Origin: Octopus sinensis | Lineage: Eukaryota | Assembly (NCBI RefSeq): GCF_006345805.1 | Contig: NW_021828015.1 | Span: 1 to 64,000, forward strand | DNA: 64,000 nucleotides | Reading direction: 5' to 3' | Part shown: positions 3,541 through 35,392 of the stretch, piece by piece | Numbering within the stretch: position 1 is the first letter of the stretch | Layout: each line of letters opens with the position of its first letter | Notes under the pieces: model-generated | The model's input: only the letters and a program-made list of their open reading frames with translations | Told to the model about the DNA's origin: nothing | Database searches by the model: none | Program-made: the position numbers and the translations under genes

Positions 3541-5214
3541 CCAAAGATATAGCAGAAAAGAAGTTTGCCAATGTCCAGCGACGTGAGGACCAAAGAACTG
3601 AGGTATTTCGTATTGCTAGACAGTGTGTGAGAGAAAATAGTGATGTTACAGGGGAGAAATGTGTCCGCATGGATGATGGGGCACTTGCTTTTAATGTTGG
3701 TGAAAAGAAAGAGGCTTGGAGAAGCCATTATGAAAGACTGTTGAATGTGGAGAATGAATGGGAGGAGGAGAGGCCAAATGTTGACCCAGTAGAGGGACCA
3801 GCTATCCAAATAGACAGCTCACTTGTAGTTAAGGCAATTAAGGATATGAAACCAGGTAAAGCCCCCGGCCCATCAGGAATCACTGCTGAGATGCTTAAAA
3901 CAGCTGGTTATGCGGGCTATGGCCTAGTCACCCGTATTGTTAACCAGGTAGTTCATAATGGAGTCATACCCAATGACTGGCGTAGCAGCACCATAGTCAA
4001 CTACTACAAGGGTAAGGGTGATGCTCTAGATAGAAATAACTACAGGGGTATTAAAACTGTTGGATCAGGTGATGAAGGCCACAGAGAGGGTCATAACCCA
4101 TCTCATTAGGGAGAGAATTTGCTTAGATGAGATGCAGTTCGGTTTTGTGTCGGGTAGAAGCACCACTGATGCTAGATTCCTGGTCCGACAACTGCTGGAG
4201 AAATACCTAGCTAAAGATAAACCCCTCTACATAGCTTTTGTGGACTTGGAGAAAGCCTTGACAGGGTTCCCCGATCCCTTATCTGGTGGTCGATGCGGAA
4301 ACTGTTGATTCACGAATGGCTAATAAGGGCTGTACAGGCTCTATACAGAGAGGCTGTCAGCAAGGTTAGGATTGGCAACGAATATAGTGAAAAATTCCGG
4401 GTAGAAGTAGGTGTACACCAGGGCTCAGCCCTCAGTCCCCTTTTATTCATCATAGTCCTCCAGGCAATAACAGAGGAATTCAAAACAGGTTGCCCCTGGG
4501 AGCTCCTCTATGCTGATGACCTGGCCCTCATAGCAGAATCGCTACCGGAACTAAAAAAGAAATTTCGGGTGTGGAAACAAGGGTTGGAATCAAAGGGCCT
4601 TAGAGTAAATGTAGCGAAGAACAAAGTTATAGTATGCAGAAAGGCGAACTCAGCACACACCCCATCGGGCAGGTGGCCCTGCTCGAGCTGTAGGAAAGGT
4701 GTAGGTAGAAACTCCATAAGATGCACCCAATGTAAGCTTGGACGCACAAGAGGTGCAGCAACATTAAAGGGAAATTAACAGATAAGATAGCTTTCATGTG
4801 CGGCAGATGCACAGGGACAATAGACACCACAGACACTCAGAAACAGATTCCATCACACTCCAGGGAGAGAAACTAGAAGTAGTTGATAGTTTCCGCTACC
4901 TGGGTGACCAAGTTAGTAGTGGGGGTGGATGCTCAGAGAGTGTCACCACTAGAACACGAATAGCCTGGGCAAAGTTTAGAAAGCTGCTACCCCTACTGGC
5001 GACAAAGGGTCTCTCACTCAGAGTGAAAGGTAGATTGTATGATGCATGTGTGCGAACTGCCATGCTTCACGGCAGTGTGAAACATGGGCCGTGACTGCAG
5101 AGGACATGCGTAGACTTGAAAGAAATGAAGCTAGCATGATCCGCTGGATGTGTAATGTCAGTGTGAATGCACGACAGAGTGTAAGCACCCTGAGAGAAAT
5201 GCTAGGCATAAGAA
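3541..5214 (+). mobile_element. 5'-truncated RTE-clade LINE, RT region (5' segment, interrupted by a CR1 insertion)
   Basis: Overlapping ORFs 3627-4109 (KAPGPSGI..EMLK, NYRGIK), 4060-4308 (QFGF..GRSTTDA..FVDLEKA), 4293-4778 (GVHQGSALSPLLF..LLYADDL), 4798-5094 (FRYLG). The frame reads ..REMLGIR at 5214 and resumes SIRCG.. at 8326. Confidence 0.93.
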
Positions 5215-8200
5215 TCCGTGGCTTCCCTAAATCGCAACTCTGTGCCACAGGAGAGTTTTAGCCTCCGCGATGATGGGCAGATCTGGACATTCGTCAAGTC
5301 TGGTGAGTCGTGGATAAGGGATGCCAGCTGGACTGAGCAGACTACACCCACAACAACTGGCAATGCAAAAATCTTGGGGAAACTAACCAAGAACAATCAG
5401 CCATCCCCTGTATATCATCATCTGAAATCCAGATATAAACTGCTGTCCTTGAATGCCCGTAGTTTATGCAACAAGGTGCATCTTTTTGTCTCTACGTCAA
5501 AAGTATCAACCCAGATTTCATCACAGTCACGGAAACGTGGGCACACTCTGCACTCTGTGATGGAGTTTTCAGCATAGCCGGCTACAACCTGTTCCGCAAA
5601 GACCGCATTAATCGCCGTGGAGGGGGTGTGATGATTTATGTTCGATCAAGTCTTTCGGCAATCCCCTGTGATGATTTGAACCAATCTCAGCAGGAGGTAT
5701 TTTTCTGCAATGTACACATGACCATGTCAACACTTCTGCTCGGAGTCGTTTACCGTCCTCCAAATTATCGCCAAGACGCACAGCTTTTTGATCTCCTCAG
5801 GGCGGCTGCCATGAAAACAGCCACATATGTGTATGTTGCGGGGGACTTCAATTCCCTGAGATTGACTGGGAGGCCTTCCGTTGGCCGCAAAGTGCAGACG
5901 ATTTTCTTGAACTGGTGCTGAATTCGAATTGGTCCCAAGTTGTTACCCCCCACAAGGGGGTAACAAACACTTTGGATCTGCTACTAACCGCTTCTCCTGA
6001 AACAATCATTAGTGTCGCTACCGAAGAACCTTTGGGGACTCTGATCATTCCATGATCATGGCCGATTGTCTCTGATTGGTTGTAACAAAAAACACAACCA
6101 TCTTCAGATTGCCCGCTTTGACTGGAATAAAGCAAACTGGAGCTCTTATTGTACTGAGCTGCAACGCCCAAACTGCGCGCGAATTTTATGCCTCTGGAGA
6201 TGTGGACACTATACTCCAGAACATTCTGAATTCAATATGGGCAGCATGTGCAGCATCAGTACCACGCAAGCACAAAAAACCACCCAATAGTGCAATTTGG
6301 GAGACTGCAGCAGTCCGACTTGCCAGGAAAGAACGCCGTAATGCTGAACGGGAATACAAATTGCATAAATCAGAGAGCAACAGGAAAAAGCGCAATAGGT
6401 CAGCCAACCACCTCAAGCAGGTGACAAAAAAGGCAGTGCTTGAATTTGAACAACGCATTGCAGCTAACCCTGACAGCAAAGGGTTCTGGAAGTATGTGCA
6501 CTCAAAGCAGAGACCCCACTCTCCTGTTGGTCCCCTTCGCAATCCCCACACAGGACAGATTACTGGCAATCCCGAAGAATGTGCAGAAATCATTGCTGGA
6601 TGCTATGCCGGCATCTTTACTGTCGAAGACCAAAATGTTCCATCATCATCACCACTGACATCGGACTCTATATCTTCTATGCAATTTACACCAGCAATGC
6701 TGCAACGCCACCTAAAGATTAAACGCAATTATGCCTCTCCTGGTCTCAATGGTGTTACATACCTAGTTCTCAAATGCAGTGGGTACTTTCTTCTAAGCCA
6801 ACTTTCTCTATTCTTCCAATTCTGTCTCGACAATGGTGTTACTCCAGAACAGTGGAAAACTGCCAGTGTCATCCCTCTGTTAAAAAAAGGCGACCGCACA
6901 TCGCCTGTCAACTATCGCCCCGTCAACTATCGCCAAACTGATGGAATCCTGTATCAGAGAAACCCTCTGGAACTTCTGGAAGTCTCACAGCCTCAGCCAG
7001 CCGTCACAATTCGGATTTATTCCTAACTCCAGCTGCTGTAATCAACTCATCGAGTTTCTTGAGGACGTTACCCAAATCACTGATCGCGGATCCTGGGTGG
7101 ATGTTGTTTACCTGGACTTTGCTAAGGCTTTTAACTCTGTGCCACACAAAAGACTTATGGTGAAGCTTTCTGCGTTGGGTGTAAGAGACGAACTCTATAA
7201 CTGGTTAAAGTCCTTTATTTTCGGCCGAAAAGAGGTTGTCACAGTTCTAGGACAGCACTCTTCGCCCTATGAGATGACATCTGGTGTGCCGCAGGGATCT
7301 GTTCTTGGCCCTCTTTTATTTGTTGCATATGTTAATGACATAGATGCCAACTTAAAGAATGCCACAGTGCTGAAATATGCAGATGACATCAAGCTGTACC
7401 TCCAAATAAAGAGGTCAAATCCTGTACACTATGGATCTCTATTGCAAGCAGACCTGGACACAATGCAGCAGTGGATCATGGACTGGCAACTCAAGCTGGC
7501 TGTGGACAAATGTACCACCATGCATTTTGGGAGGAGAAACCCAGCGTCCACCTACTCCCTCCACACACTAGTCTCAAAAAGTCTTCAAGTGAACGTGACC
7601 TGGGTGTTATTGTCGACAGTGATTTGCGTTGGACAAAACACATCGCTAAAATTGTCAAGAAGGCTGAGGGTGTCTTGGCATCACTCACCAAATCCTTTGT
7701 GAGCGCTCTCCGGCTATCTATCTGCGGCTTTATATAGCTATGGTAAGACCTCACCTGGAATTTGCATCACCGGTCTGGAACCCTTATCTTCCCAGGACAT
7801 CAATCGTCTAGAAGCTGTTCAGCGACGTGCAACCAAAAGAATACCCTCCATCAGGCATTTGCCATATCCTGAACGCCTTACTTCCCTGGGCATGGACACA
7901 TTAAAACTCCGACGTCTGGCAGCTGACTTGGCAGACACCCATAAAATTATCAACCATCGCACAAACAATAACTCTGAGCACCTCTTCAAACTCCACCCAT
8001 CTAACACCCGTGGACATATTTACAAAGTAAGAAAACAGCACAGCTCCCATGACTTCAGGAAACATTTTTTCACGCTGAGAGTTGCTGAAGCGTGGAACAA
8101 ACTGCCGGCATCGGTTGTTAGTTGTCGGAGCACTGCATCCTTCAAAACTTCATGCTTCCTGAGATTCGCCAACACTACACTTGATTTTCTCCCTTCCATA

Positions 8201-8318
8201 CACACACAAGCATGTTCACTTTCCAGACATTTCTACATTGCTGCATGTACTTTATATGCACTTCTGACAAGTTGTGGTGCACCTGAGCACTGTATACAAT
8301 AATTTCATTATTATTATT
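5215..8318 (+). mobile_element. CR1-clade LINE: essentially complete ORF2 (APE + RT), 5'-truncated, (ATT)n tail, 7-bp TSD
   Basis: APE motifs LNARSL, VTETW, RKDR..GGGV, VYRPP, GDFN (5430-5860). RT motifs YLDFAKAF.SVPH, SGVPQGSVLGPLLF, KYADD (6941-7702). C-terminal RRLAADL..K and FFTLRV..WNKLP. ATAAGAA occurs at 5208-5214 and 8319-8325. Confidence 0.93.
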
Positions 8319-18129: not shown

Positions 18130-18770
18130 GTGTGTGTATATGGGTGAATGTACCATTCTGTGTATGTGTGTGCGTGTGTGTGTATGTGTAGGTGAGTGTG
18201 TCATTTTATGTGTGTGTATGTAGGCAAATGTGTTATTCTATGTGTGGGGGTGGGTGAATGTGTCATTTTCTGTGTGTGTGTATGTGTGTGTTTGTAGGTG
18301 AGTGTGTCATTTTGTGTGTGTGTATGTGGGTGGATGTGTCATTCTGTGTGTGTGTGTGTATGTTGGTGAATGTGTTATTTTGTGTGTGTGTATGTGTGCT
18401 ATTTTGTGTGTGTATGTGGGTGAATGTGTCATTTTGTGTGTATATATGTGGGTGAATGTGTCATTCTGTGTGTGTGTATGTGGGTGAATGCATCATTTTG
18501 TGTGTGTATATGTAGGAGAATGTGTTATTTTGTGTCTGTGTCATTTTGTGTGCGTGTCATTTTGTGTGTGTGCATGTAGGTGAATATATCATTTTATGTA
18601 CATGTGTGTATGTGGGTAAATGTGTCATTCTGTGTGTGTATGTAGATGAATGTGTCATTTTGTGTGTGTGTATGTAGGTGAATATGTAATTTTATGTACA
18701 TGTGTGTATGTGGATGAATGTTTCATTTTGTGTGTGTAGATGAATGTGTCATTTTGTGTGTGTGTCATTT
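18130..18770. repeat. TG-rich minisatellite (~30-40-bp unit GTGTGTATGTGGGTGAATGTGTCATTTT)
   Basis: Repeated GAATGTGTCATT(T/C)TGTGTG units. Confidence 0.9.
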
Positions 18771-19800: not shown

Positions 19801-20171
19801 AATACCATTCCAGTCAGACCTATGATCAAAGCCAGCCCAATCATCTTTTTTCTTAAAATCATACTTGGTGTATACTGATCTATAATATCAACTTTGTCTT
19901 TTTGTTTTTTAAAGACAGAAAGATGTTGTCTGAGGAAGATCTGACTGTTATTTTTATGTAGTTTAGTTGAGCAATCATTCAGAGCTCAAAACAAAGAAGT
20001 AAACAGTAAGTAAATATCGTAACGTATTTTTGCCATTTCAATATGGCTAACCCCTAAGGGTGGATGCTACTGTAGTTTTTAGCCCCAGGAGGACACACTC
20101 CTCCAGCTGGCCATAGACACACTTTCTGTGTCCTGTCAGTATTTGCAAAGGGAAGTCATCCTTCCCGTCTT

Positions 20172-20241
20172 CAACTTATGATACACACGGACTCGAGTTT
20201 CGAGGTATTGACCTCTCGTCAGCGTGTGACAATCATAGTTG
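20172..20241 (-). ncRNA. Type I hammerhead ribozyme (first of 11 minus-strand copies)
   Basis: Reverse complement of the motif at 24110-24179. Confidence 0.9.
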
Positions 20242-23200
20242 TCGCCGAGAATTAGATTCCTTCACAAATACTTATACTTTTTCCAGCGTCCACTGTCGCT
20301 GATTTGAAAAAGTGAAATCAAACAATGAATAAATATCAAAGTTAGTATATACAGTACTAGCGGTGTAACACATCGTAACGTATTTTTGCCATTTCAATAT
20401 GGCTAACCCCTAAGGGTGGATGCTACTGTAGTTTTTGGCCCCAGGAGGACACACTCCTCCAGCTGGCCATAGACACACTTTCTGTGTCCTGTCAGTATTT
20501 GCAAAGGGAAGTCATCCTTCCCGTCTTCAACTTATGATACACACGGACTCGAGTTTCGAGGTATTGACCTCTCGTCAGCGTGTGACAATCATAGTTGTCG
20601 CCGAGAATTAGATTTCCTTCACAAATACTTATACTTTTTCCAGCGTCCACTGTCGCTGATATTGAAAAAGTGAAATCAAACAATGATAAATATCAAAGTT
20701 AGTTATATACAGTAGCGGTAACACATCGTAACGTTTTTTGCCATTTCAATATGGCTAACCCTAAGGGTGGATGCTACTGTAGTTTTTAGCCCCAGGAGGA
20801 CACACTCCTCCAGCTGGCCATAGACACACTTTCGTGTCCTGTCAGTATTTGCAAAGGGAAGTCATCCTTCCCGTCTTCAACTTATGAACACACGGACTCG
20901 AGTTTCGAGGTATTGACCTCTCGTCAGCGTGTGACAATCATAGTTGTCGCCGAGAATTAGATTTCCTTCACAATACTTATACTTTTTCCAGCGTCCACTG
21001 TCGCTGATATTGAAAAAGTGAAATCAAACAATGATAAATATCAAAGTTAGTTATATACAGTAGCGGTAACACATCGTAACGTATTTTTGCCATTTCAATA
21101 TGTAAACCCTAAGGGTGGATGCTACTGTAGTTTTTAGCCCCAGGAGGACACACTCCTCCAGCTGGCCATAGACACACTTTCTGTGTCCTGTCAGTATTTG
21201 CAAAGGGAAGTCATCTTCCCGTCTTCAACTTATGATACACACGGACTCGAGTTTCGAGGTATTGACCTCTCGTCAGCGTGTGACAATCATAGTTGTCGCC
21301 GAGAATTAGATTTCCTTCACAAATACTTATACTTTTTCCAGCGTCCACTGTCGCTGATATTGAAAAAGTGAAATCAAACAATGATAAATATCAAAGTTAG
21401 TATATACAGTAGCGGTAGGGTAACACATCGTAACGTATTTTTGCCATTTCAATATGGCTAACCCTAAGGGTGGATGCTACTGTAGTTTTTAGCCCCAGGA
21501 GGACACACTCCTCCAGCTGGCCATAGACACACTTTCTGTGTCCTGTCAGTATTTGCAAAGGGAAGTCTCCTTCCCGTCTTCAACTTATGATACACACGGA
21601 CTCGAGTTTCGAGGTATTGACCTCTCGTCAGCGTGTGACAATCATAGTTGTCGCCGAAATTAGATTTCCTTCACAAATACTTATACTTTTTCCAGCGTCA
21701 CTGTGTGCTGATATTGAAAAAGTGAAATCAAACAATGATAAATATCAAAGTTAGATATACAGTAGCGGTAACACATCGTAACGTATTTTGCCATTTCAAT
21801 ATGGCTAACCCTAAGGGTGGATGCTACTGTAGTTTTTAGCCCCAGGAGGACACACCCTCCAGCTGGCCATAGACACACTTTCTGTGTCCTGTCAGTATTT
21901 GCAAAGGGAAGTCATCCTTCCCGTCTTCAACTTATGATACACACGGACTCGAGTTTCGAGGTATTGACCTCTCGTCAGCGTGTGACAATCATAGTTGTCG
22001 CCGAGAATTAGATTTCCTTCACAAATACTTATACTTTTTCCAGCGTCCACTGTCGCTGATATTGAAAAAGTGAAATCAAACAATGATAAATATCAAAGTT
22101 AGTTATATACAGTAGCGGTAACACATCGTAACGTATTTTTGCCATTTCAATATGGCTAACCCCTAAGGGTGGATGCTACTGTAGTTTTTAGCCCCAGGAG
22201 GACACACTCCTCCAGCTGGCCATAGACACACTTTCTGTGTCCTGTCAGTATTTGCAAAGGGAAGTCATCCTTCCCGTCTTCAACTTATGATACACACGGA
22301 CTCGAGTTTCGAGGTATTGACCTCTCGTCAGCGTGTGACAATCATAGTTGTCGCCGAGAATTAGATTTCCTTCACAAATACTTATACTTTTTCCAGCGTC
22401 CACTGTCGCTGATATTGAAAAAGTGAAATCAAACAATGATAAATATCAAAGTTAGTTATATACAGTAGCGGTAACACATCGTAACGTATTTTTGCCATTT
22501 CATATGGCTAACCCCTAAGGGTGGATGCTACTGTAGTTTTTAGCCCCAGGAGGACAACTCCTCCAGCTGGCCATAGACACACTTTCTGTGTCCTGTCAGT
22601 ATTGCAAAGGGAAGTCATCCTTCCCGTCTTCAACTTTGATACACACGGACTCGAGTTTCGAGGTATTGACCTCTCGTCAGCGTGTGACAATCATAGTTGT
22701 CGCCGAGAATTAGATTTCCTTCACAAATACTTATACTACTTTTTCCAGCGTCCACTGTCGCTGATATTGAAAAAGTGAAATCAAACAATGATAAATATCA
22801 AAGTTAGTTATATACAGTAGCGGTAACACATCGTAACGTATTTTTGCCATTTCAATATGGCTAACCCTAAGGGTGGATGCTACTGTTTTTAGCCCCAGGA
22901 GGACACACTCCTCCAGTGGCCATAGACACACTTTCTGTGTCCTGTCAGTATTTGCAAAGGGAAGTCATCCTTCCCGTCTTCAACTTATGATACACACGGA
23001 CTCGAGTTTCGAGGTATTGACCTCTCGTCAGCGTGTGACAATCATAGTTGTCGCCGAGAATTAGATTTCCTTCACAAATACTTATACTTTTTCCAGCGTC
23101 ACTGTCGCTGATATTGAAAAAGTGAAATCAAACAATGATAAATATCAAAGTTAGTTATATACAGTAGCGGTAACACATCGTAACGTATTTTTGCCATTTC

Positions 23201-24109
23201 AATATGGCTAACCCCTAAGGGTGGATGCTACTGTAGTTTTTAGCCCAGGAGGAACACTCCTCCAGCTGGCCATAGACACACTTTCTGTGTCCTGTCAGTA
23301 TTTGCAAAGGGAAGTCATCCTTCCCGTCTTCAACTTATGATACACACGGACTCGAGTTTCGAGGGATTGACCTCTCGTCAGCGTGTGACAATCATAGTTG
23401 TCGCCGAGAATTAGATTTCCTTCACAAATACTTATACTTTTTCCAGCGTCCACTGTCGCTGATATTGAAAAAGTGAAATCAAACAATGATAAATATCAAA
23501 GTTAGTATATTACAGTAGCGGTAACACATCGTAACGTATTTTTGCCATTTCAATATGGCTAACCCCTAAGGGTGGATGCTACTGTAGTTTTTAGCCCCAG
23601 GAGGACACACTCCTCCAGCTGGCCATAGACACACTTTCTGTGTCCTGTCAGTATTTGCAAAGGGAAGTCATCCTTCCCGTCTTCAACTTATGATACACAC
23701 GGACTCGAGTTTCGAGGTATTGACCTCTCGTCAGCGTGTTGACAATCATAGTTGTCGCCGAGAATTAGATTTCCTTCACAAATACTTATACTTTTTCCAG
23801 CGTCCACTGTCGCTGATATTGAAAAAGTGAAATCAAACAATGATAAATATCAAAGTTAGTTATATACAGTAGCGGTAACACATCGTAACGTATTTTTGCC
23901 ATTTCAATATGGCTAACCCCTAAGGGTGGATGCTACTGTAGTTTTTAGCCCCAGGAGGAAATGGCAAAAATACGTTACGATGTGTTACCGCTACTGTATA
24001 TAACTAACTTTGATATTTATCATTGTTTGATTTCACTTTTTCAATATCAGCGACAGTGGACGCTGGAAAAAAGTATAAGTATTTGTGAAGGAAATCTAAT
24101 TCTCGGCGA

Positions 24110-24179
24110 CAACTATGATTGTCACACGCTGACGAGAGGTCAATACCTCGAAACTCGAGTCCGTGTGTATCATAAGTTG
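24110..24179 (+). ncRNA. Type I hammerhead ribozyme
   Basis: CAAC-UAUGAU-ugu-CACACG / CUGACGA (24129-35) / GAGGU-caau-ACCUC / GAAA (24150-53) / C-ucga-G / UC, predicted cleavage after C24161 / CGUGUG-u-AUCAUA-a-GUUG. All three helices pair and the core is canonical. Confidence 0.93.
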
Positions 24180-24462
24180 AAGACGGGAAGGATGACTTCC
24201 CTTTGCAAATACTGACAGGACACAGAAAGTGTGTCTATGGCCAGCTGGAGGAGTGTGTCCTCCTGGGGCTAAAAACTACAGTAGCATCCACCCTTAGGGG
24301 TTAGCCATATTGAAATGGCAAAAATACGTTACGATGTGTTACCGCTACTGTATATAACTAACTTTGATATTTACATTGTTTGATTTCACTTTTTCAATAT
24401 CAGCGACAGTGGACGCTGGAAAAAAGTATAAGTATTTGTGAAGGAAATCTAATTCTCGGCGA

Positions 24463-24532
24463 CAACTATGATTGTCACACGCTGACGAGAGGTCAATACC
24501 TCGAAACTCGAGTCCGTGTGTATCATAAGTTG
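24463..24532 (+). ncRNA. Type I hammerhead ribozyme (second plus-strand copy)
   Basis: Same motif; CUGACGA at 24482-24488, predicted cleavage after C24514. Confidence 0.92.
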
Positions 24533-25279
24533 AAGACGGGAAGGATGACTTCCCTTTGCAAATACTGACAGGACACAGAAAGTGTGTCTATGGCCAGCTG
24601 GAGGAGTGTGTCCTCCTGGGGCTAAAAACTACAGTAGCATCCACCCTTAGGGGTTAGCCATATTGAAATGGCAAAAATACGTTACAATGTGTTACCGCTA
24701 CTGTATATAACTAACTTTAATATTTATCATAGTAAGTAAATAATTCAATGAAAAGAAGAAAAATATAAGATATGGTAAAAAAAAAGGATATTTCACTAAA
24801 ATCTCAAGAACAAAGTTAACAGGGCTTGATAATTTAATGCTATAAAAACTTCATTTAAATGTCATTAAAATCTCATTAAAATATCATCAAAATGCCATTA
24901 AATGACAAGGTTTTTTATTTAATTGTCTCCGTTACAGTACAATAAAGATTATTCTTGGAAGGTAGCTGATGAAATAAATCATAAAAGAAATAAAGGAAAC
25001 ATGAAAAATAACAGAAAAAAATTGGTTGATTAAAATTCCTTCTTTTAGTTTTATTATTATTTTTACTTTCTTTTACTTGTTTTGGTCATTTGATGGTGAC
25101 CATGCTGGGGCACTGCTTTGAAGGGTTCTAGTTGAACAAATCAACCCAAGGAATTAAAATTTATTTTAAAAGTCTGGTATTTATTCTATCAGTCTTTCTT
25201 GCCAAATTGCTAAGTTATGAGAATGTAAACACACCAAGCAGTGGCAGGTAACAAAAACAGACAGAAACACACAAACACA

Positions 25280-26451: not shown

Positions 26452-26661
26452 AGTTTTTCTAATGCTCGTTGCTTAGTTTTTCTTGGAGGGCTGGCCGTGA
26501 TCTAGTAATCTCAGATTAATCAGCCGAAATTATACGATGATCCGGTTCTTGACTGAAGACTGAGGGTTTCGAATGTCCTGTCCGTGTTTATTGTATCGTC
26601 TTCTTGAGTTATACGTTCTTGTCCATGTTGTATTTTTCTACATACCTTAATATATATATAT

Positions 26662-26755
<94 letters not shown>

Positions 26756-26982
26756 GTATATACATATATAATATATGTATATACATATATATTATGTGTA
26801 TATACATATATATATATATGTGTATATACACATATATATATATATATATGTATATATACACATATATATATATATATATGTATATATACACATATTATAT
26901 ATATATGTATATATACACATATATATATATATATATGTATATATACACACATATATATATATATATATGTATATATACACAC

Positions 26983-27015
<33 letters not shown>

Positions 27016-27047
27016 CATATATATATATATAATATGTATATATACAC

Positions 27048-27080
<33 letters not shown>

Positions 27081-27097
27081 CAACATATATATATACG

Positions 27098-27133
<36 letters not shown>

Positions 27134-27229
27134 CGTATATATACATATATATATATACGTATATATACATATATATATATACGTATATATACATATATAA
27201 TATATACATATATACACATATATATATAT

Positions 27230-27262
<33 letters not shown>

Positions 27263-27296
27263 TATATACATATATATATATATATGTATTATATAC

Positions 27297-27340
<44 letters not shown>
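26198..27340. repeat. Long compound (TA)n/(TATG)/(TACA) microsatellite containing a short repeat at ~26450-26650
   Basis: Direct inspection. Confidence 0.95.
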
Positions 27341-32871: not shown

Positions 32872-32959
32872 GGTATATGGTGAGGTGGTTTATGATGTGG
32901 TTAATGGTGTTGGGATTTTGGGGAGGCAAGAGTGGGGAAAGCAAGGGTGGGGTGTGGTT

Positions 32960-33205
32960 AGGCTGAGGGTGGGGTAGAGGTGGGTGGGTGGGGGGGTAGA
33001 GGTGGGGTGGGGTAGAGGTGGGGGTGGGGTAGAGGTGGGGTGGGGTAGAGGTGGGGGTGGGGTAGGGTGGGGGTGGGGTAGAGGTGGGGTGGGGTGTAGA
33101 GGTGGGGGTGGGGTAGAGGTGGGGGGGGGGTGGTGGGGTAGAGGTGGGGGTGGGGTAGAGGTGGGGGTGGGGTGTGGTAAGTAATGGGGTGGGGGTGGAA
33201 GGGTG
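32960..33205 (+). repeat. G-rich minisatellite (GGGGTAGAGGTG)n with G-quadruplex potential
   Basis: More than 20 runs of >=3 G. Confidence 0.85.
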
Positions 33206-35392
33206 GGGTGGAATGGGAATAAGCTTAGTAATTATTCCATCAGTCTCTTTTTGCAGAACTGTTAAGAACCAGCATCGGTTGTCAAGTGATGGTGGGGAGT
33301 AAACACAGACATACACACACACACACACACATACATATATATATTTATTGAATTCATAAAAGGTGTTTTTTTTTTTCTAATTTATATATATATATATTAT
33401 ATTTTGTGAAATTTGATTTAGTATTTCTAAATTGAATTTTTCCCTCTAAGTTTGGAATAATATTCCCTCATATATATATATATATTATATATATTATTGT
33501 GTATAAATAATTTAAGCATTTATTAATCATTTAGTCATGAAAGAGGTGACCTGTGACAGGACACCTTACATGCTAGAAAGGGCAGTCAAAGCCCAAACCA
33601 CGAATAAGAGCAATTTCAAAGGGAATGAAAATAAAAAAATATTTTTGTACTTACCCTCAAACTTGAGTTTCGGTATCAATGTACAAATAAATTAATTTGC
33701 CATCCGTACTTCATCTGTGAAGTCGATAAAATTAATGCACATTTATGCAGCAAATAGCACCGAAAACACACGTGCACACCAGTTTTAGTATGTATGTGTG
33801 TGAACGTGTGTGTGGGGTGTATTCTGCATAAGTTCGGAAATGGTGACCAGGGAAAATTTTTCCTGAATATAATAAGATTTCAGCATATATATTGACAATA
33901 GAATATAATCTAATATTGTAGCATAATCCTCGTCGTTTAACATCCACTTTCTATGCTGGCATAGGTTGAATGGTTTGACTGAGGACTGACAAGTCAGAAG
34001 ACCGCACCAGGCTCCAGTCTGATCTGGCAAAGTTTCTACAGCTGCATGCCCTTCCTAACACTAACCACTCCAAGAGTGAAGTGGGTGCTTTATACATGCC
34101 ATCTGCATGAGGGCCAGTCAGGCGGTACTGGCATCGACCACACTTGAATGGTGCTTTTTGCATGCCACCGGCACAGGAGCCAGTCAGGGGCTGGCACTGG
34201 CAGCAACCATGCTCGATTGGTGCTTTTTACACACCACTGGCATGGGAGCCAGTCAGGGGGCACTGGCAACAACCATGCTTGAATGGTGCTTTTTACATGC
34301 CACCAGCACAGGACCAGTCAGGCGACACAAAAAATGGGTATTAGTACACATTGCTATCGAACTCACACCTCTTACTTTCGCAATAAGTGTGCTACCAATT
34401 ACACCAACAATCTCATCCATCTTTGCTTCATTAAGTTTAAGAACTATGACTTCATAGTGGTGTGTATACATGCATATTCTTCATAATTTAAGAAAAAATG
34501 ATAAGTGAAAATTTTGCATAAATATGATTGTAAGTTTTCACTGACTACACAAAATAATCTAATATTGGGACACATAAACCCACAAACGCTACCTGTTTTC
34601 ATGCACTTGTTCTTGGTTCTTCTGAAGAAAATATTATGAATTCATCACATCATGATACACAACCATCAAAATTCGTGGTAGTTAATACTATCTTTGCTTT
34701 TTTCATTTATGATTAGCATTGCCTCAGTATTTCATCTGCTTACACAATATGCATTGTTATATGAACCAGTTACAGATCATTTGAAACAGGTGTAAAGATT
34801 AGACTATTTTACACCTGTTATTGTTTGTCCAACCTTTTTGGGGGTTAGAGGATTAATATCAATCCTTCACCTACCTGACTCTTCTACCTCTGGACTACTT
34901 CTAACAACTTTGTATGACCATGGTACTCATTTACAACTATTGTGCAATGTTAAAACAAAGAAACATAAACACATACATATGCATGTATATGTATGTGTAT
35001 TGTAAATATATATATATATATACATACATATATATTAATTGAAGTGTATTATATATCCATTACAGCTGATCTTACCAATTGTTTTTGCAATAGGAATTCA
35101 ATGATGTGTTAGGTAACAGTCCAATTATGTAACACTGCACTCTTCAGAGGTAACCATTAAGGAATGAAATCGACCATTATCGATATATAATACTGTACAC
35201 TGTGATTCATATACCCACTCTAGTAGAGTGGGTATATGAGGGAAGATATATGAGTGCGTTTTTTTAGTGGCTTATAGATTCTTAGATGGCTTACAGACAC
35301 ACACACACACATTCACATATATCTATATATCTATATCTATATGCATGTATATATATACATATATATATATATGTATATATATACATATATAC

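What the first reader, a model, noticed from the sequence alone, without database searches (positions are those of the whole stretch)
20005..24742. Whole 4.7-kb multimer is bracketed by one 12-bp target-site duplication: single-event insertion, suggesting rolling-circle reverse transcription
Seen: AGTAAGTAAATA occurs at 20005-20016 and 24731-24742, exactly abutting both array ends, and is not part of the monomer. Both ends fall at mid-monomer positions, with no poly(A) tail and no TIR. Established: TSDs of this length are typical of target-primed reverse transcription. Inference: about 13.4 monomers were inserted at once, as expected if an RT ran repeatedly round a ~353-nt circular RNA or copied an uncleaved multimer. 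This would be genomic evidence for circRNA-templated retrotransposition building satellite DNA. Later expansion by unequal exchange is the alternative.
Basis: partly seen in the sequence, partly recalled or inferred. Interest (0 to 1): 0.88.

Follow-up and report, generated by a model that had tools for sequence, protein, structure and literature searches.

The report
Two-armed hammerhead retrozyme insertion
The 4.7-kb block is a "retrozyme", a known kind of non-coding mobile element made of 353-bp repeats that each encode a self-cleaving hammerhead ribozyme; it sits between a real 12-bp target duplication as two oppositely oriented arms, a layout that points to a Penelope-like reverse transcriptase.

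Summary
The 12-bp duplication AGTAAGTAAATA is real. It abuts both ends of the block exactly and is far beyond chance. The block is not one head-to-tail multimer. It has 11.2 units in one orientation (20017-23959) and 2.2 units in reverse complement (23960-24730), joined head-to-head at a 2-nt microhomology. This makes the element a metazoan non-LTR retrozyme, probably in a cephalopod. The ribozyme-sense 3' ends of both arms point outward, as expected if both 3'-OH ends of a staggered break primed cDNA synthesis. The two start points are internal (monomer positions 173/174 and 216), 42-43 nt apart, and both lie just 5' of UGU. This resembles the Penelope-like element (PLE) signature of an inverted 5' copy, a "tail" and internal initiation. 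Each arm exceeds one unit, so the template was circular or multimeric. Whether all 13.4 units arrived at once cannot be decided, because the monomers differ almost only by indels that look like assembly noise. This is a new member of a known kind. The PLE-like layout is the only possibly new point.

The parts
20005..20016 (+). Left copy of the 12-bp target-site duplication AGTAAGTAAATA. Its 3'-OH is the inferred primer for the left-arm cDNA.
   Evidence: The last A (20016) could also belong to the monomer, so the boundary is ambiguous by 1 nt (pair I8).
20017..23959 (-). Left arm: 11.2 units of the 353-nt retrozyme, ribozyme-sense on the - strand. The RNA-sense 3' end is at 20017 (monomer position 173/174). 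The 5' end is at 23959 (position about 97).
   Evidence: TRF: period 353, 11.2 copies, 97% matches; phasing; ribozyme strand.
20184..23740 (-). Eleven type I hammerhead ribozymes on the - strand: 20184-20228, 20540-20584, 20889-20933, 21238-21282, 21593-21637, 21940-21984, 22293-22337, 22642-22686, 22993-23037, about 23343-23387 (A>C in helix II/loop 2) and 23697-23740.
   Evidence: Rfam RF00163 scores 32.2 bits for nine copies (gathering score 34) and 27.3 bits for one. One copy is found only by the core pattern.
23958..23959 (.). Head-to-head inversion junction with 2-nt microhomology (GA) between the inner (5') ends of the two arms. The palindrome is not perfect: the arms meet at monomer positions about 97 and about 153. 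This leaves a 56-nt spacer (23904-23959) between 771-bp inverted repeats.
23960..24730 (+). Right arm: 2.2 units, ribozyme-sense on the + strand. The 5' end is at 23960 (monomer position about 153). The RNA-sense 3' end is at 24730 (position 216).
   Evidence: TRF: 2.2 copies, 99% matches, 0 indels.
24123..24520 (+). Two type I hammerhead ribozymes on the + strand (24123-24167 and 24476-24520). Sequence: CACACG CUGACGA GAGGU-CAAU-ACCUC GAAA C-UCGA-G UC / CGUGUG.
   Evidence: alignment to RF00163: 32.2 bits, E 5.9e-6 in a 901-nt search.
24688..24730 (+). A 42-43-nt extension by which the 3' end of the right arm overshoots the 3' end of the left arm in monomer phase. It is a candidate equivalent of the PLE 'tail', the stretch between two RT start sites.
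   Evidence: (I8). Compared with PMC3846280, PMC8557442 and PMC11167929.
24731..24742 (+). Right copy of the target-site duplication. On the - strand its 3'-OH is the inferred primer for the right-arm cDNA.

Best explanation
This is one insertion of a metazoan-type (non-LTR) retrozyme: a non-coding 353-nt unit with a type I hammerhead ribozyme, which folds into a highly base-paired RNA. A 12-bp staggered break was made in AT-rich DNA (top strand AAATA^ATTCAA, bottom strand CTTACT^GTTTAC). Both exposed 3'-OH ends then primed reverse transcription on retrozyme RNA. Initiation was internal, at monomer positions 173/174 and 216, each immediately 5' of UGU in the template, with 0-1 nt of homology to the target. 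Each cDNA ran over more than one unit (3.9 kb and 0.77 kb), so the template was a circle or an uncleaved multimer. The two cDNA 3' ends were joined head-to-head at a 2-nt microhomology.

The enzyme was most likely a Penelope-like element RT/GIY-YIG endonuclease. In vitro that enzyme cleaves and extends both strands and initiates internally at two adjacent sites.

Shown: the TSD, the two inverted arms, the ribozymes, the phasing of the ends, and the junction microhomology. Inferred: dual priming, PLE as the enzyme, and a circular template. Probably most or all units date from the insertion (roughly 45-50%), but this cannot be established from the locus.
For: The TSD is exact, abutting and non-random.

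All 13 units have an intact hammerhead core: CUGAnGA, GAAA, GUC, a 6-bp helix I, a 5-bp helix II, and a 2-bp helix III with a tetraloop.

The unit is 353 nt, has 41.7% GC, has no ORF over 85 aa, and its recurrent 63-aa ORF has no homologues. The RNA folds at -122.8 kcal/mol with z -6.8. All of this matches the published definition of metazoan retrozymes (PMC7229834).

The ribozyme-sense 3' ends of both arms face outward, which is the geometry required if each target 3'-OH primed a cDNA.

The outer ends are 42-43 nt apart in phase and share the same downstream UGU, which only 12 of 353 positions have.

The inversion junction has 2-nt microhomology and is asymmetric.

Literature: PLE insertions often have an inverted 5'-truncated copy at the 5' end, a 30-40-bp tail at one end and 8-10-bp TSDs. 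Purified PLE protein cuts and extends both strands, prefers AT-rich/ATT sites, and starts RT internally at two adjacent sites not homologous to the target. Non-autonomous PLE derivatives give multicopy head-to-tail insertions. The circRNA-to-tandem-cDNA model is published.
Against: This is a single locus. No second copy of the family could be retrieved, so preferred start sites and recurrent architecture are untested.

The PLE-specific features are individually weak. Head-to-head orientation has a 50% prior. A phase offset of 43 nt or less has a 25% prior. 42-43 nt is slightly outside the reported 30-40. Only one of the two nicks abuts ATT.

There is no PLE in the window. The only RTs there are APE-type LINEs.

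The ribozyme scores 32.2 bits, just under Rfam's gathering score of 34 (one search found nothing at gathering).

Copy number at insertion is unknowable here. The left arm could have grown later by unequal exchange.

One 1-nt difference separates the arms: A5 in 11/11 left units and A6 in 2/2 right units. This needs two templates, RT slippage, or an assembly error.
Confidence: 0.65

Rival explanations
1. Same insertion, but only a short oligomer (for example 1-2 units per arm) was inserted. Most of the 11.2 left-arm units arose later by unequal sister-chromatid exchange or replication slippage. This is the standard satellite-expansion model.
For: This is the model the 2026 preprint on animal retrozymes favours for array growth. 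TSDs survive such expansion. The two arms differ five-fold in length. Nothing at the locus fixes the original copy number.
Against: No variant is shared by neighbouring units in a nested or stepwise pattern. All 6 substitutions are singletons, and the shared indels fall in short homopolymer or dinucleotide runs in mostly non-adjacent units. With this little real variation the test has almost no power. A 3.9-kb cDNA is within the size of full-length PLEs.
Confidence: 0.35
2. The retrozyme RNA was mobilised by an APE-type LINE through classical twin priming (as for L1 inversions), not by a Penelope-like element.
For: APE + RVT_1 LINE fragments are present in the window. L1-type twin priming also gives a TSD, 3' ends facing outward and microhomology at the inversion junction (from established knowledge, Ostertag and Kazazian 2001, not re-read here). 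The NAR 2020 paper leaves LINEs open as mobilisers.
Against: There is no poly(A) or microsatellite 3' tail and no LINE-derived 3' end. Both cDNAs start internally with 0-1 nt of homology to the target. The tail-like offset and type I hammerheads are PLE traits, and the tail is reported as not seen in non-LTR TPRT.
Confidence: 0.15
3. Only one target strand primed cDNA (the left arm). The cDNA 3' end then snapped back on itself (2-bp GA/TC pairing, 56-nt loop) and copied 771 nt of its own strand before joining the other flank. The right arm would then be DNA-templated.
For: The GA at 23958-59 can pair with the TC at 23904-05 (and the sequence). Self-priming has been proposed for PLE inverted junctions.
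Against: The right arm differs from the reverse complement of its would-be template at 11 sites but from the family consensus at only 5. It shares none of the private variants of the neighbouring left units, and it has A6 where all left units have A5. Its outer end lies next to the same UGU motif as the left start site and 42-43 nt from it, which is not expected for a random stop point. PLE palindromic junctions are described as palindromes, and this one is asymmetric.
Confidence: 0.12
4. The insertion had no RNA intermediate. Either a piece of satellite DNA was re-inserted at a staggered double-strand break (for example from extrachromosomal circular DNA amplified by rolling-circle replication), or it is a foldback-type DNA transposon whose inverted arms are made of tandem repeats.
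For: Inverted arms made of tandem repeats and a short TSD also describe foldback elements (from general knowledge). eccDNA has been proposed to spread satellites.
Against: Every unit has an intact self-cleaving ribozyme of the class known to yield circRNAs. The arms are very unequal. A 12-bp TSD is long for DNA transposons. There is no transposase. The strand polarity of both arms matches cDNA priming.
Confidence: 0.05
5. The inversion (and perhaps the copy number) is a long-read assembly artefact, such as a chimeric or palindromic read. The true locus would then be a simple head-to-tail array.
For: The interior of the array has about 1% indel errors: 41 indel events against 6 substitutions. 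Indel density in the ten full left-arm monomers is above that in the remaining units, the partial copies next to the flanks and centre junction plus the right arm (p = 0.02). This suggests poorly polished long-read consensus. Craig et al. note that PLE tandem/inverted structures trouble assemblies.
Against: A palindromic-read artefact gives a perfect palindrome and inverted flanks. Here the junction is asymmetric (56-nt spacer). The right arm ends in unique sequence carrying a direct, not inverted, copy of the 12-mer in the right geometry.
Confidence: 0.07

Closest known systems
Metazoan non-LTR retrozymes (Cervera and de la Pena, NAR 2020, PMC7229834; review PMC7761336)
   Same: Tandem units of 150-450 bp (here 353). 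A type I hammerhead in every unit, with a 2-bp helix III capped by a tetraloop as in invertebrate retrozymes. GC below 50%. No LTR, PBS, PPT or coding capacity. A highly self-paired RNA. A TSD longer than 4 bp. The proposed life cycle is circRNA copied into tandem cDNA and integrated.
   Different: The head-to-head two-arm layout, the defined internal start points and the tail-like offset are not described in those papers ('inverted' occurs 0 times in the NAR text). The host appears to be a cephalopod, and I found no report of a cephalopod retrozyme. RNA circularity and self-cleavage are untested here.
Penelope-like element insertions (Penelope/Poseidon, Neptune, Naiad; PMC3846280, PMC8557442, PMC11167929)
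   Same: Direct tandem copies plus an inverted 5'-truncated copy at the 5' end (head-to-head). A short TSD (8-10 bp reported, 12 here). An extra stretch at the 3' end of one inverted arm (31 bp or 30-40 bp reported, 42-43 here). An AT-rich target. Internal, non-homologous RT initiation. A hammerhead motif.
   Different: There is no RT/GIY-YIG ORF, so the element is non-autonomous. The repeated unit is the whole element, not a pLTR. The hammerhead is a full type I, not the minimal PLE variant. No PLE is present in the window.
L1 twin-priming inversions (Ostertag and Kazazian 2001; from memory, not re-read)
   Same: A TSD, a 5' segment inverted relative to the 3' segment, both RNA 3' ends facing the flanks, and microhomology at the internal junction.
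   Different: No poly(A), no A-rich priming site, and a tandemly repeated ribozyme RNA as template.
Hammerhead satellites of newts and salamanders, and Schistosoma Sm-alpha / W-elements (PMC7229834, PMC8490949)
   Same: Repeats of about 330-350 bp with type I hammerheads, transcribed, satellite-like.
   Different: The amphibian ribozymes have a 1-bp helix III. Those arrays are huge and were described as satellites, whereas this is a single discrete TSD-flanked insertion.
Plant LTR retrozymes (PMC4918200)
   Same: A non-autonomous retroelement with hammerheads that produces circRNA.
   Different: Plant retrozymes have type III hammerheads, LTRs, PBS/PPT, 4-bp TSDs and Gypsy-type mobilisation. 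None of these is present here.

Membership tests
Metazoan non-LTR retrozyme | A type I hammerhead ribozyme in each tandem unit | tested here: met
   13 of 13 units have the CUGAnGA...GAAA...GUC core with helices I, II and III. RF00163 scores 32.2 bits with a full-length alignment. Caveat: this is 1.8 bits below Rfam's gathering score, and nothing was found at gathering.
Metazoan non-LTR retrozyme | Tandem repeat unit of 150-450 bp with GC below 50% | tested here: met
   353-bp unit. GC is 41.7%.
Metazoan non-LTR retrozyme | No LTR, PBS or PPT, and non-coding | tested here: met
   The whole insert consists of the 353-nt unit. ORFs are 85 aa or shorter and frame-unstable. The recurrent 63-aa ORF has no homologue.
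Metazoan non-LTR retrozyme | TSD longer than 4 bp, when present | tested here: met
   A 12-bp exact TSD.
Metazoan non-LTR retrozyme | Highly self-paired monomer RNA | tested here: met
   MFE -122.8 kcal/mol, z -6.8 against 100 shuffles. The circular fold is -117.7 kcal/mol.
Metazoan non-LTR retrozyme | Expressed as linear and circular monomer RNA; ribozyme self-cleaves | not testable with these tools
   No transcriptome or wet-lab data are available.
Metazoan non-LTR retrozyme | Dispersed multicopy family in the genome | tested here: inconclusive
   There is no second copy in the 64-kb window. There are no matches in the metagenome, prokaryote-genome or viral collections. These collections do not hold the host genome.
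PLE-type insertion signature | An inverted 5'-truncated copy adjacent to the 5' end of the direct copies (head-to-head) | tested here: met
   The 2.2-unit inverted arm abuts the 5' end of the 11.2-unit arm. Both RNA-sense 3' ends face outward.
PLE-type insertion signature | A 30-40-bp 'tail' at the 3' end of one arm only, lying between two RT start sites | tested here: inconclusive
   The right arm overshoots the left by 42-43 nt, slightly over the reported range. The chance of an offset of 43 nt or less is 0.25. Both sites are followed by UGU.
PLE-type insertion signature | Internal RT initiation not homologous to the cleaved target | tested here: met
   The starts at monomer positions 173/174 and 216 are not at the ribozyme-processed end. 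Terminal homology to the primers is 1 and 0 nt.
PLE-type insertion signature | AT-rich target with cleavage at ATT | tested here: inconclusive
   The TSD is 10/12 A+T. The top-strand nick is AAATA^ATT. The bottom-strand nick is CTTACT^GTT, with no ATT.
PLE-type insertion signature | An autonomous PLE (RT + GIY-YIG) with a related pLTR/5' region in the same genome | not testable with these tools
   There is none in the window, and the only RTs there are APE-type LINEs. The host genome is not searchable here.
L1-type twin priming | Poly(A)/T-rich priming at the 3' end | tested here: not met
   There is no A-tract at either element end.
Plant LTR retrozyme | Type III hammerhead in LTRs, PBS, PPT and a 4-bp TSD | tested here: not met
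   The hammerhead is type I, there are no LTRs, and the TSD is 12 bp.

The most novel reading that the evidence does not exclude
The locus is the unaltered product of one symmetric, dual-strand, target-primed rolling-circle reverse transcription. The two halves of a PLE RT/endonuclease dimer each primed on a retrozyme circRNA at one of two fixed internal start sites next to UGU. The circles may have been two different ones, given A5 against A6. One half ran 11 times round and the other twice. If so, this would be the first structural 'scar' evidence that animal retrozyme arrays, and hence one class of satellite DNA, are laid down in a single step by Penelope-like enzymes copying circular RNA. 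It would also define the cis start sites.
Probability: 0.3. Interest if true: 0.65.

Novelty: new member of a known kind. Interest (0 to 1): 0.42.

Why it matters
The link between retrozymes and PLEs currently rests on co-occurrence, shared hammerheads and pLTR similarity. What mobilises them, and whether their arrays are born multimeric or grow afterwards, are still open questions. A young insertion with an intact TSD shows the PLE hallmarks: an inverted 5' arm, a tail-like offset and internal non-homologous initiation. It yields a concrete prediction that can be checked across the genome, namely that array ends cluster at two positions next to UGU. It also gives a clean substrate for the in vitro PLE system. 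As a single locus it illustrates a published model and is not a discovery. It also appears to add a cephalopod to the retrozyme host range.

Tried and rejected
(1) Rfam at gathering thresholds found nothing. The hammerhead appears only with permissive filters, 1.8 bits under threshold.

(2) I looked for other loci of the family. Two exact-pattern scans each of metagenome and prokaryote-genome contigs and one scan of viral contigs were all empty. A protein search with the recurrent 63-aa spurious ORF had no candidates. An exact look-up of the window's LINE RT ORF was not on record. blastn of the consensus against the window found no other copy.

(3) I tried using monomer variants to separate a single event from stepwise duplication. 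The test has no power: 6 singleton substitutions against 41 indel events, with deletions not confined to homopolymers, so the variants are probably assembly noise.

(4) I rejected the Rfam MIR6217 hit at 23844-24019, which is only the hairpin of the inversion junction. I also rejected the mir-297/466/3149 hits, which are microsatellites.

(5) I rejected the 14th pattern match at 60922-60964 as a chance hit inside a 21-bp tandem repeat.

(6) I considered fetching random octopus loci through LINE proteins to hunt for the family. I dropped this because each hit stands for 1-2 contigs, so the expected yield was below one locus.

(7) I considered axolotl Rtz_353, which has the same unit length. I rejected it because that ribozyme has a U-U mismatch at the base of helix II, while this one has a clean 5-bp helix II, and because the window's LINEs point to a cephalopod.

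Full report
1. The observation

AGTAAGTAAATA is present at 20005-20016 and 24731-24742 and nowhere else in the window, even with one mismatch allowed. Both copies abut the repeat block directly. Base composition of the flanks gives about 6e-7 for such a recurrence at a given position. An empirical control took random position pairs 4714 bp apart with +-3 nt slack, in this very microsatellite-rich window, and gave at most 1e-3 for 12 nt or more. The duplication is real.

There is no poly(A) at either end, and the ends are not at a natural unit boundary. The description of the block between the two copies is wrong in one important respect. Tandem Repeats Finder reports two arrays: 20016-23959 (period 353, 11.2 copies, 97% matches) and 23958-24730 (period 353, 2.2 copies, 99% matches). 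The consensus of the second is the reverse complement of the first. The inverted-repeat search confirms this: for example, 20016-20258 is 100% complementary to 24446-24688. So the insert has terminal inverted repeats and an internal head-to-head junction. It is not a 13.4-mer.

2. What the unit is

Each 353-nt unit contains CACACG-CUGACGA-GAGGU(CAAU)ACCUC-GAAA-C(UCGA)G-UC/CGUGUG. This is a complete type I hammerhead ribozyme with a 6-bp helix I, a 5-bp helix II, and a 2-bp helix III capped by a tetraloop. Rfam RF00163 aligns to it end to end at 32.2 bits. The gathering score is 34, so the default search missed it. E is 5.9e-6 on the 901-nt search, 3.2e-5 on the array and 4.2e-4 on the whole window. 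A core-pattern search finds 13 copies in the array against 0.32 expected by chance in the window. Eleven are on the - strand in the left block and two are on the + strand in the right block.

The unit has 41.7% GC, against 27-34% in the flanks. It has no ORF over 85 aa, and its recurrent 63-aa ORF has no homologue. It folds into a highly paired RNA (-122.8 kcal/mol, z = -6.8). These are the defining features of metazoan non-LTR retrozymes: type I hammerheads in 150-450-bp tandem repeats, low GC, no LTR/PBS/PPT, and TSDs larger than 4 bp when present (PMC7229834). The 2-bp/tetraloop helix III is the form that paper describes for invertebrate retrozymes.

The window's LINE reverse transcriptases (APE + RVT_1) have their best named relatives in Octopus bimaculoides at 67-76% identity. 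The host is therefore probably a cephalopod. I found no report of cephalopod retrozymes.

3. Anatomy in ribozyme-sense coordinates

Position 1 is the first nucleotide after GUC|. The left arm runs from about 97 at the centre, through ten full units, to 173 at 20017 (or 174 if the ambiguous A at 20016 is counted). The right arm runs from about 153 at the centre, through one full unit, to 216 at 24730. Four points follow.

(a) Both arms have their RNA-sense 3' ends at the flanks and their 5' ends at the centre.

(b) Neither 3' end is at the ribozyme-processed end (353/1).

(c) The right arm overshoots the left by 42-43 nt (24688-24730).

(d) The centre junction shares 2 nt (GA) and is asymmetric. 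It gives 771-bp inverted repeats around a 56-nt spacer.

Both outer ends lie immediately 5' of UGU in the template (...CGA|UGUGUU and ...UCAU|UGUUUG). Only 12 of 353 positions have this property. Both also sit just 3' of small predicted hairpins. Terminal homology between the target primers and the RNA is 1 and 0 nt.

4. Mechanism

In target-primed reverse transcription, the TSD-bearing 3'-OH on each strand faces into the insert. If both prime on RNA, the result is exactly this: two cDNA arms, antisense on the primed strand, RNA 3' ends outward, and 5' ends joined in the middle by microhomology. This is twin priming as proposed for L1 (from established knowledge).

The literature on Penelope-like elements matches more closely. 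PLE inserts are typically partial tandems with an inverted 5'-truncated copy at the 5' end and a 30-40-bp tail at one end (PMC8557442). Rotifer examples have direct plus inverted pLTRs, 8-10-bp TSDs and a 31-bp tail at the 3' end of one inverted pLTR, with head-to-head the commonest arrangement (PMC3846280). Purified PLE protein cleaves and extends both strands of an AT-rich target. It starts reverse transcription internally at two adjacent sites that are not homologous to the target, and the tail is the stretch between those sites (PMC11167929). [quoted passage not shown]

The inferred nicks here are AAATA^ATTCAA and CTTACT^GTTTAC. One abuts ATT and the other does not.

I therefore read the locus as a retrozyme insertion made by a PLE-type enzyme through dual-strand priming. 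This part is inference. From one locus the PLE-specific features are individually weak: the orientation prior is 0.5 and the offset prior is 0.25. No PLE is present in the window.

5. One event or later growth; circle or multimer

One robust point can be made. The two arms cannot recombine with each other to gain units, and each arm contains more than one unit. So in each of two independent priming events the RT crossed a unit boundary. A ribozyme-processed linear monomer cannot template that, so the RNA was circular or an uncleaved multimer.

Beyond that the locus is silent. Against the consensus there are 31 deletions, 10 insertions and 6 substitutions. The deletions are not confined to homopolymers. 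Two units are perfect and others carry 7-8 events. Indel density in the ten full left-arm monomers exceeds that in the remaining units, the partial copies next to the flanks and centre junction plus the right arm (p = 0.02). An indel:substitution ratio of about 7:1 looks like unpolished long-read consensus, not evolution.

All six substitutions are singletons, and no variant is shared in a nested pattern. This is compatible with a burst, but the statistical power is negligible. One 1-nt difference separates the arms: A5 in 11/11 left units and A6 in 2/2 right units. If real, it suggests that the arms were copied from two different homogeneous templates, as expected for two circles. It is a homopolymer length, so it cannot be trusted in this assembly.

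The snap-back alternative proposes that the right arm was copied from the left-arm cDNA. It is disfavoured. The right arm differs from its would-be template at 11 sites but from the consensus at only 5.

6. Comparison with what is known, and novelty

[quoted passage not shown] S9; PMC7761336 Fig. 2). A 2026 preprint argues from phylogenetic distribution and pLTR similarity that animal retrozymes are non-autonomous PLE derivatives, and it favours local amplification for array growth.

The element is therefore a new member of a known kind. I did not find three things described for retrozymes: the head-to-head two-arm layout, the tail-like offset and the defined internal start sites. If these recur across the family, they would be direct structural evidence for PLE mobilisation.

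7. Limits

No other locus of the family could be reached. Metagenome, prokaryote-genome and viral scans, the ORF-based search and the exact look-up were all negative. The host genome is not in the searchable collections. They are listed as next steps.

Noticed in passing
window 3627-8302 (+): Fragments of APE-type LINE retrotransposons: RVT_1 at 4293-4778 and 6941-7702, and Exo_endo_phos at 5466-5921. There seem to be at least two adjacent or nested copies. The best named relatives are 'jockey-like' proteins of Octopus bimaculoides (67-76% identity), which suggests a cephalopod host.
   Followed up: partly
window 23844-24019 (-): Rfam MIR6217 (a miRNA precursor family) hit at 74.6 bits (gathering score 110). 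It is simply the long hairpin formed by the inversion junction. A transcript through the junction could form up to 771 bp of dsRNA with a 56-nt loop, which could be a small-RNA source.
   Followed up: partly
window 24686 and 24719: The only two substitutions in the right arm are both G>A and both lie in its outermost 45 nt, the first stretch copied from the bottom-strand primer. On the first-strand cDNA both are C>T in a 5'-TC context, and the first is also a CpG. They could be initiation errors, deaminase editing or CpG decay. Two events are too few to tell.
   Followed up: no
window 20017-23959 vs 23960-24730, monomer position 259: A fixed 1-nt difference between the arms: A5 in all 11 left units and A6 in both right units. 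It shifts the spurious ORF from 63 to 84 aa. It is either a real signature of two templates or a homopolymer assembly error.
   Followed up: partly
whole window: The tandem-repeat load is very high: 24% of the window is tandem repeat and 12% has a period of 6 or less. Examples are (AT)n at 26650-27340 and (AAT)n at 37211-37522. GC is 36.6%. Permissive Rfam hits to mir-297, mir-466, mir-3149 and mir-1277 all fall in these microsatellites and are artefacts.
   Followed up: partly
window 18174-18765: A TG-rich minisatellite (32-bp unit with a 98-bp higher-order period, about 18 copies, 69-74% matches), 1.2 kb left of the insertion.
   Followed up: no
window 60582-61295: A 21-bp tandem repeat (34.7 copies) with a 125-bp higher-order period. 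It holds a chance match to the loose hammerhead pattern at 60922-60964. This match is not a ribozyme.
   Followed up: partly
window 32945-33211 and 34084-34322: A G-rich repeat (GGGTGGGGTAGAGGTGG)n with G-quadruplex potential. Nearby is a GC-rich 66-bp repeat with 3.6 copies, of unknown nature.
   Followed up: no
window 41319-41942 (-): A 207-aa ORF with no Pfam match. It lies antisense to a 139-aa ORF and may be part of a decayed retroelement.
   Followed up: no
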